From the NCBI GenBank assembly GCA_964106645.2, contig OZ067042.1: 64,000 bases of DNA; one strand, written 5' to 3'. Below, one piece after another: positions 6,820 through 20,188 of this stretch. The translations under genes were made by a program, and so were the position numbers. The first letter of the stretch is position 1, and every line of letters starts with the position of its first letter. This DNA is from Podarcis pityusensis. Lineage: Eukaryota. The notes under the pieces are model-generated. The model searched no databases. It was not told the origin of the DNA and worked only from the letters and a program-made list of their open reading frames with translations.

Positions 6820-6960
6820 CTTTCTCTCCTCTAGGTTCCCTCCACACATGGTCCCTCCACATCATAGTTTACATACGACTGGGATCCCTCATCCGGCCAT
6901 AGTCACCCCAACAGTCAAACAAGAATCTTCCCAGAATGATGTCGGCTCACTCCACAGCTC
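6820..6960 (+). CDS. TCF7L2: TCF7L2 exon 9; long form from 6820 (adds SFLSS), short form from 6835; (SFLSS)[43 protein letters not shown]
   Basis: Two acceptors 15 nt apart (cacag|C at 6820, ctag|G at 6835); donor gtaagt at 6961. Contains the VKQE SUMO consensus. Confidence 0.97.
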
Positions 6961-9360: not shown

Positions 9361-9520
9361 AAAACATCAGGACTCCAAAAAAGAAGAGGAGAAAAAGAAG
9401 CCACACATAAAGAAACCTCTTAATGCATTTATGTTGTATATGAAGGAAATGAGAGCAAAAGTTGTAGCAGAATGCACATTGAAGGAGAGTGCAGCCATCA
9501 ATCAAATCCTTGGTCGAAGG
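9361..9520 (+). CDS. TCF7L2: TCF7L2 exon 10 (160 nt), HMG box N-terminal half [53 protein letters not shown]
   Basis: ccatccag|A ... CGAAGG|gtaggt; TCF/LEF HMG signature. Confidence 0.99.
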
Positions 9521-11020
9521 GTAGGTAACTAGTCAGGATATGTATATGCAAGTTTGCATGTGGGATAGAATGAGAGTGTGATACATGTCTGAAATGAAAG
9601 GGCACAATCCACAATGTTATTTTAAGTGTGATTATAGCATTTGGCTGCCCAGTGGAACTTCCAAGATTTCTGGTTGAATACTTGTGCTTTGAAACTTCCT
9701 TGCATTCTAGTTACACAGACAAGGAAATAAAGTTACATTTTCACCAAATGCATGTGCACCTGCACAGCATAATTATATGCTACATACTTTTATCCAGAAG
9801 ATGCATTTCTTTTTCTGTCAGTATGACCCCGCTTTGATGTAGACCTTGCCTTTTCAACTCCATCCACCTCTCCATCAGTGCTTGGGCATCACCATACCTT
9901 GGTTGCTCTGCCCCTTAATTCTGAGACATGTCTTAGGAACCTCAGCATTCTTACGTCTCTCTGTAAAGTATCTCTAAACACACCACTGTAGCCTATTAGT
10001 GAAGAACTCTGTACTTAGAAGGCTGTAGAAGCTTTTACTTGAAGTTTGATTCTCCATTCTCTGGATGTAGGAACCTTAAGTCTGGATGTTGTATGAACTG
10101 TAGGCCTCTGTTCACGAGTCCCAGGTGAAGCTATAGTAATTTATGTAACTGGTAGCAGATAAATAATAGTAAAAATAAACTTCTTACATAGGGAAGGTGG
10201 AGTTGTATCTTAAAGCAGGCCTTCGCAACTTGTGGCAAAGCATAGTTCTGAAGACAGGTAGCAAATTCAAGATTTATTGGCTTCCCAGCAAGCTACAGCT
10301 TGTAGGTTCCATTTTACTTGTTCTGTCACACATTGTGCAGGCCTGCCTTACAGGCATTAAAAACAGGTATTTGATTAATGTATGTCATTATTATTATTTG
10401 GAGGAGGCTGGTTTACCAGAGTGACAAATTGTGACAAGTGGGGAAGGGAGAGGCAAATTTAAAGTATGGTCTACTTTATGGGCATTTCTTGCATGTCTTG
10501 TTCAAATGAATGCTGGTTAAAGGGGAATAGCTGTTGGCGGCTGGTCCATCAGGGTGAGTGGGGCTCTGTCCCATCAAGACCTCACCTGCCTGCCTTCTTA
10601 CTTACAACCATTCCTGGGATGGCACCGCCTGTCATTTTCCACCTCCTTAGTCTCAGTGCTGCCCTTTCACAACACAGCAAAGAGGATGTTGGCAACAAAG
10701 CTGGAATTAGTTGATTCTGCCTGCCATTGGCTCCTGCTTCTACTACTGTTGGTCTTCCAATGGGCACCATCTACCACTGGTAAAAGTACTTGAAGAATTA
10801 CACTATTCCATTTTCAAAAGTGAAAGACTCCATCGGTATAACCCAGCTTAAGCAAACCTGGATAAAACAGAGTTCTTAAGAATAAATAAATAGTCTGCAT
10901 CAGTTGATATGCTTTAATTGGCTGCCATTTTCCAAAGTTTGAATGTGAATGCACATTGTACACACACTGTATTACTGACGTTCTGTTGTGCTTGTGGTTT
11001 TGTTTTCTTTCTCTCTGCAG

Positions 11021-11128
11021 TGGCATGCATTATCCAGAGAAGAACAAGCTAAATATTATGAACTAGCCAGAAAGGAACGACAGCTCCACATGCAGCTTTA
11101 CCCCGGCTGGTCCGCACGGGATAACTAT
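11021..11128 (+). CDS. TCF7L2: TCF7L2 exon 11 (108 nt), HMG box C-terminal half [36 protein letters not shown]
   Basis: ctctgcag|TGG ... AACTAT|gtaggt. A second identical donor lies at 11141. Confidence 0.99.
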
Positions 11129-14100
11129 GTAGGTGGCTATGTAGGTGGAATTTTTTTCAGTAGTAGAGCTTGTAGACAAGTACTGCTGTAATCTGCTGAA
11201 GTACACCCACACACGGAAGACAAGCACTACCAATCCAGTAATTCTAGCGGATGTTTTGGTTTTGTCGCCAACCCATTTGGATACAATTGGCACCCATTCA
11301 ACTGAGGTGTGTCAGTAGAGCTCTGAGGGGGGGCGGGGAAATCTGGCCGTGTGTCTTCCATCAGGGCACCAGCTTTTGTGCAGTTTACAAAAAAAGAAAA
11401 TAATAAAACAAGAAAGAGCTCCCTCTCTATTATCACCCTCATCTCCTTCCCTTACCCCCCAAATTAGTGCCTTGTTGCATACCTGTGTGAGAGTATAGTG
11501 GAAAGTGGAAGAATGACTTACCCTAGCTTCAGAGAAGGACTGGCAAAGACTTGTTGGAGGTCTTGCTCTCAAGTGGGGCTAAATAAATTATTCCACCCTC
11601 TACTTTTTTATATTATTGTACTGTTGTCTGTCATGGTCACAATTTTTTCATAAATGCTTTCAATTCATGATGTCTTTACCAAACATCTTGGTGCTAGCTA
11701 TTGGTGAACTATTCCTGTGCAATTCTCATTTGCCACACTTTTCTTCCATTGAGTTATTCTAACTGTGGCTGCTTGGTTTCAGAGATCAGTGTCTCGATTT
11801 AACAAGAGAGAGATGTGCGTGGAAGCTGCCTTTTGCATGCATGACAAACCCTGCCTTTGTGCTGGCAATGCAGATGCATTGTGAATGAGCATTGGACACT
11901 AAAATGTTCATTCAAACCCTGATGAAGTGGCTGGCTTCATCTTTAGATGTGAAGGGGATGCAAACCTGCATAAATCTACCAATTAATACGCATGACTGTT
12001 TGGTCACAGCTATGGCTGAATTGCAGCCAAAATCCCATAGGCAGGAAATAAGCATAGCATGTACATTCAGAAGGAAGTAATAGCTCACTGATAAGTATTT
12101 CCAAGTTTACAGATTGTACCTAATAGAAATTGGTAAAATCTCTAAAGCTTCCCAGACATAATTAATTAATCACTGAAAGGCACCAATCATGTAAGGGAAA
12201 ATTTAAATAGAGGCCAGATGTCAACAGTATCAAGACATTGTTGCAAGATCACAAGTGGAAGGGGGGTAATCAATTTATTTCATTTAAAAACATTGCTCCT
12301 CTGCTTTTGCCACAGATACTTTTGAGCTGTTTCACAGAATTAGAATAATATACAAGATGACATAAAAGCTGAAATACACCCACACAGCCCCAACATATTA
12401 GACCCTACCAAACAGATGTTTAAGCCAAGTCTTGCAAGCACTATGGAAAAGTTAATACAAGTAGGCTTTGACAGACCTCCTGTACAGCTGGTTCTACAAA
12501 GTCCTATAATTGAGAAGGGTGTGCTTTATATCTGGTAGGATGACCAGATCCTGTAGCTTTAAGGGTTATATTGTAGAGGTTTCACCTTAACATGAGAAGC
12601 TGGACCTCTGAAATTCCTTCTTCATACAGGTATAATAGGTACAGGATACCTGACCTCCTTTGCCACTGGTCATTGTATTGTTCCTGCCAATCTTACCTCT
12701 CTTATTGCAGACAATCTGATATGCATTAGCAATTTTGTTGAATCTGCTGTCTTGATTATTTCTTTAGACTGCAGTCCTGTGCACACTTTCCTGGGAGTAA
12801 GCTCCATAGAACTCAGTGAGTCTTAGATCTAAGTGTGCAGGTGTGGGTGTGCGGGTATAGTTTTGTTTTGTTTTGCAAAGGCAGGAATTTGTTCTTCTGT
12901 AAATTAGGTAACCTATGTTCTTATGCAGCTGCACATATTTGCATGCAGAAGCCTGTAGCCTTACATGGAGAGGAGAGGCACATTAATATGCTACCAAGCA
13001 ACATTTTATTAATTCCATTTATTGAGAGAAAACAAAGACAGCATCTTAGTTTAGTATTTTGGCTCCTAAAGATGAAGTGTTGTTTAAAACTTATAATCAA
13101 CACCTGTGGTATCAAAATCCTCACATTATCCTTCCCTAGTTCTTATTTCTTCACATGCATAAGAGAGTATCTGTATACCCTCTTTTGAGGTGATTTCCCT
13201 TACAAACCAGGAGCTGTCGCCGACCATTTTTGCCACCACCAAATTCATAGCCCACATTTTGTGCCATGAACGGAGTGGAATGAAGCTGTCAGACCACAGG
13301 GCCGATTCATTCCTGGTACTCTGCAGTCTGATTCCTCTTGGGAGTTCCTGGGGGAGTAGCGCTGGGATGTGCCGTAATGCTTGAAAGATTTCCAGGAAAC
13401 ATTTCCTCTGCTTTAGTGACTGTGTCACTGACAGATGGGCATGTACTGTGTCTTAAATGTTTAGGACCTTTACATTTGTCCTCAGCGTGTGAGCACTGAA
13501 AATCCCTTTCTTCTCAAGCTAAAAAGGACAGGATAAGAAAGCTGATACGTCCCCAGCAGCTTGAGGCTCTATCCCCACCTGACCTTCAGGGGGAACCTTA
13601 CTACAGTAGGAGAACTCAATAGCTTTGGATCACACAAGCACATGATCTACAAGGCTTTTACTTTTTTCTGCATAACACTCAGAATTTCTGGAGTCTGTCC
13701 TCTTCCACGTGCTTTCTTTGGACAACAGTCTTTCTACAGATATAGAAAGGAAATGGGGACTGCACTGTATGTAGTGACTAGATGACCCTCTGTGTCCTTT
13801 TCATCTTGTATTTATGTCTCACACACATGATAGTGTCTGCCATACCTAATGAAGTTTTGGAGGCCTCTGTGCACATATCTTAATTTTTTCACAACTTCAA
13901 GCAAAATTAAATATCGGAAGCTAAGTCCTTGGTTCCAACTGTCCAGTCAAAATTTAAGTATTGAATTTAGGGTTCATATTTTTATTTAAGCAGCATGTCA
14001 ACCAGGATAAGACTTTTGTATACTTGAACGATATTTTTAAAAAAACACTCCCTGAAGACAGATTAAAAGTTGTTATACAAAAACATGACTTTTCATTTTA

Positions 14101-18363: not shown

Positions 18364-18412
18364 GGCAAAAAGAAGAAAAGGAAAAGGGACAAACAGCCAG
18401 GAGAGACCAATG
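18364..18412 (+). CDS. TCF7L2: TCF7L2 exon 12 (49 nt), basic tail/NLS GKKKKRKRDKQPGETN
   Basis: ttcattcag|GGC ... AATG|gtaagt. Confidence 0.98.
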
Positions 18413-18943: not shown

Positions 18944-18994
18944 AACACAGCGAATGTTTCCTAAATCCTTGCCTTTCACTTCCTCCGATTACAG
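18944..18994 (+). CDS. TCF7L2: TCF7L2 alternative exon 13 (51 nt), EHSECFLNPCLSLPPIT
   Basis: ttttttttcag|AACAC ... ACAG|gtgcta; known cassette exon peptide. Confidence 0.96.
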
Positions 18995-19971: not shown

Positions 19972-20100
19972 NNNNNNNNNNNNNNNNNNNNNNNNNNNNN
20001 NNNNNNNNNNNNNNNNNNNNNNNNNNNNNNNNNNNNNNNNNNNNNNNNNNNNNNNNNNNNNNNNNNNNNNNNNNNNNNNNNNNNNNNNNNNNNNNNNNNN
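19972..20100. other. Assembly gap (129 N), ending 15 nt before exon 14
   Basis: Run of N. Confidence 0.99.
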
Positions 20101-20115
20101 CTTGACCTCATTCAG

Positions 20116-20188
20116 ACCTGAGCGCTCCTAAGAAATGCCGAGCGCGCTTTGGCCTTGATCAACAGAATAACTGGTGCGGCCCCTGCAG
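20116..20188 (+). CDS. TCF7L2: TCF7L2 alternative exon 14 (73 nt), C-clamp [24 protein letters not shown]
   Basis: ttcag|ACCTG ... TGCAG|gtgtgt; CRARF motif. Confidence 0.98.

What the first reader, a model, noticed from the sequence alone, without database searches (positions are those of the whole stretch)
11125..11148. Exact 12-nt tandem duplication of the HMG-exon splice donor, giving a potential VGGY-insertion isoform
Seen: CTATGTAGGTGG occurs twice head to tail (11125-11136, 11137-11148). This creates two donors identical from -4 to +8 (CTAT|GTAGGTGG), with GT at 11129 and 11141. Using the second donor adds GTA GGT GGC TAT in frame: ...[19 protein letters not shown]. Known: in TCF/LEF the basic tail right after the HMG box contacts DNA, aids bending and is the NLS, and this junction is normally invariant. 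Inference: a lineage-specific new alternative 5' splice site altering the DNA-binding module, possibly heavily used because both sites are equally strong. I do not recall it in mammals.
Basis: partly seen in the sequence, partly recalled or inferred. Interest (0 to 1): 0.8.

Follow-up and report, generated by a model that had tools for sequence, protein, structure and literature searches.

The report
Old duplicated splice donor in lizard TCF7L2
The 12-base duplication at the end of the TCF7L2 DNA-binding exon is real and is shared by several lizard lineages, so it is old and fixed, but whether the second splice site is used to add four amino acids (VGGY) could not be tested and is more likely a minor event than a major one.

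Summary
Observation confirmed. CTATGTAGGTGG stands twice at 11125-11148, the only exact 9-15-nt tandem duplication in the window. It gives two donors identical from -4 to +8. The second adds VGGY in frame before GKKKKRKR.

It is not an assembly artefact. The same 24 bases occur in Phrynosoma platyrhinos. An Anolis carolinensis TCF7L2 model reads VGGYVGG. Three unidentified Logan contigs carry diverged copies (VGSY, VRGY). A whale TCF7L2 model has one copy, so the duplication is derived and old.

One GenBank model (Phrynosoma JD844_006836) splices NY-VGGY-GKKKK, but it is a flawed MAKER/AUGUSTUS model that may have been steered by the Anolis read-through protein. A Podarcis model reads NY-GKKKK.

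Evidence against a constrained coding insert:
- All three changes in the 12 bases fall at first or second codon positions. The exon has 0 of 72 such changes.
- One lineage has donor 2 weakened (GTT).
- Published work favours the upstream site among equal donors flanked by long introns.

Best reading: donor 1 is the main site and donor 2 is minor or silent. This is a new member of the known class of tandem donors. Interest is modest.

The parts
9361..9520 (+). TCF7L2 exon encoding the first half of the HMG box.
   Evidence: Boundaries.
11021..11128 (+). TCF7L2 exon encoding the second half of the HMG box (WHAL...RDNY), ending in phase 0 at donor 1
   Evidence: Translation. Pfam HMG_box positions 39-69. 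Identical peptide in named TCF7L2 proteins P0124, P0165 and P0213.
11125..11136 (+). Repeat copy 1 (CTATGTAGGTGG). Donor 1 GT is at 11129-11130.
11137..11148 (+). Repeat copy 2 (CTATGTAGGTGG). Donor 2 GT is at 11141-11142.
11129..11140 (+). The 12 nt that would become coding (VGGY) if donor 2 is used
   Evidence: Translation. The Phrynosoma model P0165 reads NY-VGGY-GKKKK.
11151..11157 (+). U-run just after copy 2, at +11 from donor 2 and +23 from donor 1. It is kept in all five lizard-type loci.
   Evidence: A role as a splicing enhancer is inference only.
18364..18412 (+). Next exon, encoding the basic tail and nuclear localisation signal (GKKKKRKRDKQPGETN)

Best explanation
A 12-nt tandem duplication copied the 5' splice site of the second HMG-box exon of TCF7L2 in an ancestor of several lizard lineages, and it became fixed. 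It left two equally weak donors (UAU|GUAGGU) 12 nt apart, in frame: a delta-12 tandem donor. I think the upstream donor (GT at 11129) is the main site and yields the canonical NY|GKKKKRKR protein. The downstream donor (GT at 11141) is probably used little or not at all. If it is used, it yields a stable in-frame isoform with VGGY between helix 3 of the HMG box and the basic tail. Shown here: the duplication, its phase, its presence in other taxa and its derived state. Inferred: which donor is used and how much. My sub-odds for donor 2: a minor share of about 1-30% of transcripts, 0.4; essentially silent, 0.3.
For: The duplication is real and unique in the window. The identical 24 nt occur in Phrynosoma (L009). 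The same read-through peptide occurs in A. carolinensis XP_003230746.2 (P0124). Diverged copies occur in Logan contigs L001, L010 and L002. A single copy in whale TCF7L2 (P0167) shows the duplication is derived.

Evidence that donor 1 is the main site:
- Donor 1 keeps GT and +5G in all five loci. Donor 2 has +3 A->T in L010.
- Among the five loci, exon 11 differs only at third codon positions (0 of 72 first/second positions). All three changes inside the 12 nt are at first or second positions (G->S, G->R).
- The Podarcis muralis TCF7L2 model reads NY|GKKKK (P0213).
- Carranza et al. 2022 (PMC9225289) report that equal-strength competing 5' sites flanked by long introns favour the upstream site. 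It was the major site in 60% of all equal-strength pairs, with the long-intron class sharing that preference, and was used exclusively in minigenes. Here the flanking introns are 1.5 kb and 7.2 kb.
Against: No RNA reads could be examined, so donor use is not measured. One public gene model (Phrynosoma JD844_006836, P0165) splices from donor 2. Donor 2 keeps the ancestral spacing to the conserved U-run, and it is intact from -4 to +7 in four of five loci despite saturated divergence of the surrounding intron in L002. In L002 donor 1 carries +4C and pairs less well with U1 than donor 2 does (-2.3 against -6.1 kcal/mol in a crude duplex estimate). The minigene data in the literature used larger spacings than 12 nt.
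Confidence: 0.65

Rival explanations
1. Donor 2 is used heavily or mainly. Lizard TCF7L2 then commonly carries a four-residue insert (VGGY, VGSY or VRGY) between the HMG box and the basic tail, as a lineage-specific change of the DNA-binding module.
For: The two donors are identical from -4 to +8. Donor 2 keeps the ancestral intron context, including the U-run. The frame is open and the 12-nt spacing is kept in all five loci. Phrynosoma model P0165 uses donor 2. Spacers of 2-5 residues occur naturally at this junction in other TCFs, so an insert should be tolerated.
Against: P0165 is a poor AUGUSTUS model: its start is intronic, an exon is missing and its end runs into an intron. It was built with A. 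carolinensis NCBI proteins as hints (PMC8848323), and those may have included the read-through model XP_003230746.2, which would pull the exon past donor 1. There is no codon-type constraint on the 12 nt. Donor 2 is weakened to GTT in L010. Upstream sites are preferred in long-intron contexts.
Confidence: 0.22
2. The second copy is never a splice site. It persists as part of the strongly conserved intron start, for example as a U1 decoy or enhancer, as spacing for the U-run, or as one arm of the hairpin that the two copies can form.
For: The first ~50 nt of this intron are conserved in general. Lizard VGG[IN]FFSS resembles whale VGGSFFSG when read through. The repeat unit is quasi-palindromic, and the two copies fold into an 8-bp hairpin of -7.5 kcal/mol in the window and in Phrynosoma.
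Against: The hairpin is not kept by compensating changes. It weakens to -3.9 kcal/mol in L010 and -4.6 in L002. The 126-nt fold is not unusual for its composition (z -1.3). A site identical to a used donor and 12 nt away is unlikely to be wholly ignored.
Confidence: 0.12
3. The duplication is an assembly artefact or a private variant of the sequenced animal.
For: None beyond the general possibility.
Against: The same duplication is in an independent Phrynosoma assembly, in an A. carolinensis protein model and, in diverged form, in three Logan contigs from other runs.
Confidence: 0.01

Closest known systems
Tandem alternative 5' splice sites 2-12 nt apart (TassDB2 class, delta-12 donors)
   Same: Two GT donors 12 nt apart, in frame, which would give a four-residue insertion or deletion without nonsense-mediated decay. 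TassDB2 lists 46,654 human delta-12 donor motifs, of which 267 (0.6%) have both forms confirmed (PMC2878309).
   Different: Here the two sites are exact copies made by a tandem duplication, not a chance GT near a real donor, so their intrinsic strengths are equal. Use of both forms has not been shown.
WT1 +/-KTS (delta-9 tandem donor)
   Same: Alternative donors a few nucleotides apart insert residues between DNA-contacting modules of a transcription factor. It is named as a delta-9 donor in TassDB2. That it changes DNA binding is from my own knowledge.
   Different: WT1 +/-KTS is experimentally established, conserved across vertebrates and kept at a regulated ratio. For TCF7L2 VGGY there is no transcript evidence beyond one gene model.
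Known TCF7L2 alternative splicing (exon 4, LVPQ/SFLSS alternative sites at exons 7 and 9, exons 13-16)
   Same: Same gene. The LVPQ and SFLSS variants also arise from nearby alternative donor and acceptor sites (Weise et al., PMC2847248). The SFLSS alternative acceptor is visible in this window at 6820/6835.
   Different: None of the described events lies at the donor of the HMG-box exon. The described events leave the HMG box and basic tail untouched.
Natural spacer variation between the HMG box and the basic tail in other TCFs
   Same: Invertebrate TCFs read NY-AQQG/ATHT/GYGS/AQS-KKKK, a teleost TCF7L2 model reads NY-ACNQQ-GKKKK, and a snake TCF7 model carries a 33-residue insert at the same junction.
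   Different: The invertebrate spacers are constitutive sequence. The two vertebrate models, by my reading, use a different route (an alternative acceptor or an extra exon). None comes from a duplicated donor.

Membership tests
TCF7L2 (TCF/LEF HMG-box transcription factor gene) | HMG box split over two exons | tested here: met
   Pfam PF00505 on both exon peptides: E 1.5e-10 and 1.5e-06
TCF7L2 (TCF/LEF HMG-box transcription factor gene) | Basic tail GKKKKRKR directly after the HMG box, encoded by the next exon | tested here: met
   Exon at 18364-18412. Aligns to residues 77-86 of LEF-1 in PDB 2LEF.
TCF7L2 (TCF/LEF HMG-box transcription factor gene) | TCF7L2-specific flanking exons and identity to named orthologues | tested here: met
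   PPHH...[29 protein letters not shown] and the ...LSLVTKSLE stop are all in order on the + strand. Exon peptides are identical to A. carolinensis, Phrynosoma and Podarcis TCF7L2 entries.
Tandem alternative 5' splice sites (delta-12) | Two GT/GC dinucleotides 2-12 nt apart at an annotated donor | tested here: met
   GT at 11129 and 11141
Tandem alternative 5' splice sites (delta-12) | Both sites have donor-like context | tested here: met
   Identical from -4 to +8. Crude U1 duplex estimate is -6.2 kcal/mol for each, against -14.0 for the consensus. Both are weak but equal.
Tandem alternative 5' splice sites (delta-12) | Both splice forms seen in transcripts | not testable with these tools
Only gene models exist: donor 2 in P0165, the canonical junction in P0213.
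Tandem alternative 5' splice sites (delta-12) | Tandem motif conserved between species | tested here: met
   Both GTs are present in all five lizard-type loci. Donor 2 is weakened at +3 in L010.
Described TCF7L2 splice variants (Weise et al. 2010) | The event lies at exon 4, at the exon 7/9 alternative sites or at exons 13-16 | tested here: not met
   The site is the donor of the second HMG-box exon. It is not among the events listed in PMC2847248.

The most novel reading that the evidence does not exclude
The duplicated donor has been kept for a very long time across lizards because both sites are used. Squamates would then make, alongside the canonical protein, a TCF7L2 isoform with four extra residues between the HMG box and the basic tail/NLS. 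That would change DNA bending, affinity or nuclear import: a WT1 +/-KTS-like switch in a Wnt effector.
Probability: 0.15. Interest if true: 0.55.

Novelty: new member of a known kind. Interest (0 to 1): 0.3.

Why it matters
TCF7L2 is a main nuclear effector of Wnt signalling, and its HMG box plus basic tail is one of the most conserved DNA-binding modules in animals. An in-frame insert exactly at their junction, made by a duplicated splice donor and present across lizard families, would be a natural experiment on how much spacing the basic tail tolerates. It is also a clean case of how tandem duplication creates an alternative splice site. If the second donor is silent or rare, as I think more likely, it is only a small curiosity of intron evolution. 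It is also a trap for gene predictors: two public models already read into or through it.

Tried and rejected
No read-level check of the duplication or of junction use was therefore possible.
P0124 was searched by id with region 92-131 only. P0165 was looked up by id. Both proteins contain the homologous peptide of that stretch. Of locus L009 only the surroundings of exon 11 were read, in local scripts.
4. An exact look-up of the window's 67-aa genomic ORF found nothing on record.
5. A paper search for the SRA run numbers of L001, L002, L007 and L008 found nothing. The run of L010 was not searched for. The species behind L001, L010 and L002 stay unknown.
6. ENA metagenome scaffolds L003-L006 (P0010) carry a mammal-like single-copy form and could be host DNA, possibly human. 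After one look at the donor I set them aside and did not compare or search them further. The many 'VSF*' forms were likewise left alone.
7. L007 and L008 (VGGP forms) were not used, because their orthology is unclear; the upstream intron in L007 is short.
8. I did not build a joined spliced model. The donor-2 junction was examined only through the natural database protein P0165.
9. The large representative-protein search was not run. It is costly, it holds only 50%-identity representatives (a four-residue isoform would be hidden), and my claims do not rest on absence.
10. All three word searches are length-limited, so full-length (over 324 aa) lizard TCF7L2 isoforms were never seen.
11. The hairpin idea was tested across taxa and is not supported by covariation.
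12. The search of earlier findings gave nothing relevant.

Full report
**The observation.** The window reads GATAA CTATGTAGGTGG CTATGTAGGTGG AATTTTTTTC at 11120-11158. Tandem Repeats Finder reports period 12, two copies and 100% match at 11125-11148. A scan for exact non-simple tandem duplications with units of 9-15 nt finds only this one in the 64 kb. GT dinucleotides sit at 11129 and 11141, each preceded by CTAT and followed by AGGTGG. Two further GTs, at 11133 and 11145, would shift the frame.

**The gene.** The + strand carries the 3' half of TCF7L2:
- 6835-6960, with an alternative acceptor at 6820 that adds SFLSS
- 9361-9520, the first half of the HMG box
- 11021-11128, the second half (WHAL...RDNY)
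- 18364-18412, GKKKKRKRDKQPGETN
- 18944-18994, EHSECF...
- 20116-20188, the CRARF C-clamp part
- a last exon ending ...LSLVTKSLE

Pfam places both HMG halves. Exon 11 ends in phase 0, so donor 2 would add GTA GGT GGC TAT = VGGY in frame. The only solved relative is LEF-1 in 2LEF. There the insert falls between ...RDN/Y and GKKKKRKREK. The basic tail contributes to DNA binding and bending (review PMC4999783).

**Other taxa.** I searched with the genomic ORF that runs through exon 11 into the intron (window:10988-11188). The protein collection holds many such ORFs called on raw contigs.

| Source | First 12 nt after the exon | Next bases | Reads as |
|---|---|---|---|
| Window | GTAGGTGGCTAT | GTAGGTGGAA | VGGY-VGG |
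| Phrynosoma platyrhinos, L009 (GCA_020142125.1) | GTAGGTGGCTAT | GTAGGTGGAA | VGGY-VGG |
| L001 (Logan SRR29757214) | GTAGGTTCCTAT | GTAGGTGG | VGSY-VGG |
| L010 (Logan SRR33727727) | GTAGGTTCCTAT | GTTGGTGG | VGSY-VGG |
| L002 (Logan SRR2980434) | GTACGTGGCTAT | GTAGGTGA | VRGY-VGD |

The Phrynosoma exon differs from the window at 1 of 108 positions.

NCBI XP_003230746.2, a partial TCF7L2 model of Anolis carolinensis, reads through the donor as [20 protein letters not shown]... It matches the window's own read-through at 50 of 58 residues, so the window comes from a close relative of A. carolinensis.

A gray whale TCF7L2 model reads NY-VGGSFFSGL, a single copy. The duplication is therefore derived, fixed, and older than the split of the Anolis and Phrynosoma families.

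L001/L010 and L002 are much more diverged in the flanking intron. K is about 0.27-0.8 for L001/L010 and saturated for L002, against 0.07-0.27 for Phrynosoma. The duplication is thus probably far older, but their species are unknown. An assembly artefact is excluded.

**Is donor 2 used?**

*For use:*
- The sites are identical.
- Donor 2 keeps the ancestral distance to the conserved U-run.
- The 12-nt spacing and open frame are kept in all five loci.
- GenBank protein JD844_006836 of Phrynosoma (P0165) reads ...[24 protein letters not shown]....

*Against use:*
- P0165 is a weak witness. It starts in an intron, lacks an exon and ends in an intron. It came from MAKER/AUGUSTUS with a Trinity assembly and all A. 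carolinensis NCBI proteins as hints (PMC8848323). The read-through Anolis model could by itself have pulled the exon past donor 1.
- The Podarcis muralis model P0213 has the canonical NY-GKKKK. I do not know whether Podarcis has the duplication.
- Among the five loci, exon 11 differs only at third codon positions (up to 15 of 36, and 0 of 72 elsewhere). The three changes inside the 12 nt are all at first or second positions (G->S, G->R). That is not how the neighbouring codons behave.
- L010 has donor 2 as GTT, a poor +3 base. Donor 1 keeps GT and +5G everywhere, although L002 has +4C.
- Carranza et al. 2022 report that 5' sites of near-equal strength flanked by long introns favour the upstream site. 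Identical sites in exon-defined minigenes used the upstream site exclusively (PMC9225289). Here the flanking introns are 1.5 and 7.2 kb.

Both donors are weak: -6.2 kcal/mol in a crude U1 duplex estimate, against -14.0 for the consensus and about -11 for the neighbouring exons' donors.

**Side test.** The repeat unit is quasi-palindromic, so the two copies pair into an 8-bp hairpin. It is -7.5 kcal/mol in the window and Phrynosoma, -6.8 in L001, -3.9 in L010 and -4.6 in L002. There is no compensating change and the wider fold is unremarkable (z -1.3). I treat it as a by-product.

**Would the insert be tolerated?** Among the proteins fetched, the spacer between NY and the lysine run is:
- G in vertebrates (48 cases)
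- 2-4 residues in invertebrate TCFs (AQS, AQQG, ATHT, GYGS and others)
- ACNQQG in a teleost TCF7L2 model

A snake TCF7 model has a 33-residue insert at the same place. The junction is thus not invariant, and a four-residue insert is within natural range.

**Comparison with what is known.** The arrangement is a delta-12 tandem donor. TassDB2 lists 46,654 such human motifs, with 0.6% confirmed (PMC2878309). WT1 +/-KTS is the classic functional parallel. The described TCF7L2 splice events (exon 4, LVPQ/SFLSS, exons 13-16) do not include this site (PMC2847248).

**Verdict.**
- Donor 1 is most likely the main site and donor 2 minor or silent (0.65).
- Heavy use of donor 2 remains possible (0.22).
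- This is a new member of a known kind, of modest interest until junction reads are counted.

**Limits.**
- I built no joined spliced model.
- Metagenome scaffolds L003-L006, which might be human host DNA, were set aside after a first look.
- The large representative search was not run.

Noticed in passing
window 11464-11550: An 87-nt conserved non-coding element in the intron after exon 11. It is 97% identical in Phrynosoma, 93% in L001 and 91% in L010, and partly alignable in L002, while the sequence around it has diverged.
   Followed up: partly
window 11125-11148: The repeat unit is quasi-palindromic (CUAUGUAG pairs with itself). The two donors can therefore pair with each other in an 8-bp hairpin of -7.5 kcal/mol. 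The hairpin is weaker in L010 and L002, with no compensating changes.
   Followed up: yes
window 6820-6835: Two acceptors 15 nt apart in front of the RFPPHM exon give the known SFLSS variant of TCF7L2. This is the described alternative site of the gene.
   Followed up: partly
window 11133 and 11145: Each repeat copy also holds a delta-4 GT (UAG|GUGG). Its use would shift the frame. The ancestral GTAGGT donor is itself a GTNNGT tandem motif.
   Followed up: no
P0124 (NCBI XP_003230746.2, Anolis carolinensis) and P0165 (Phrynosoma JD844_006836): Two public gene models are affected by this site. The Anolis model runs through both donors into the intron. The Phrynosoma model splices from donor 2, starts in an intron and lacks an exon.
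   Followed up: yes
P0203 (JGI, teleost-type TCF7L2) and P0190 (Ahaetulla prasina TCF7 isoform X3): Other predicted in-frame inserts lie at exactly the NY|GKKKK junction. ACNQQ ends in a codon that could be CAG, so it looks like an upstream alternative acceptor. The other is a 33-residue insert in a snake TCF7 model.
   Followed up: no
window 19972-20100: An N run ends 15 nt before the C-clamp exon at 20116-20188. The acceptor region of that exon is therefore only partly readable. It was left as it is.
   Followed up: no
window 9521-9529: The donor of the first HMG-box exon is also GTAGGT (AGG|GTAGGTAAC), but with far better U1 complementarity than the exon-11 donors: -11.3 against -6.2 kcal/mol.
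   Followed up: no
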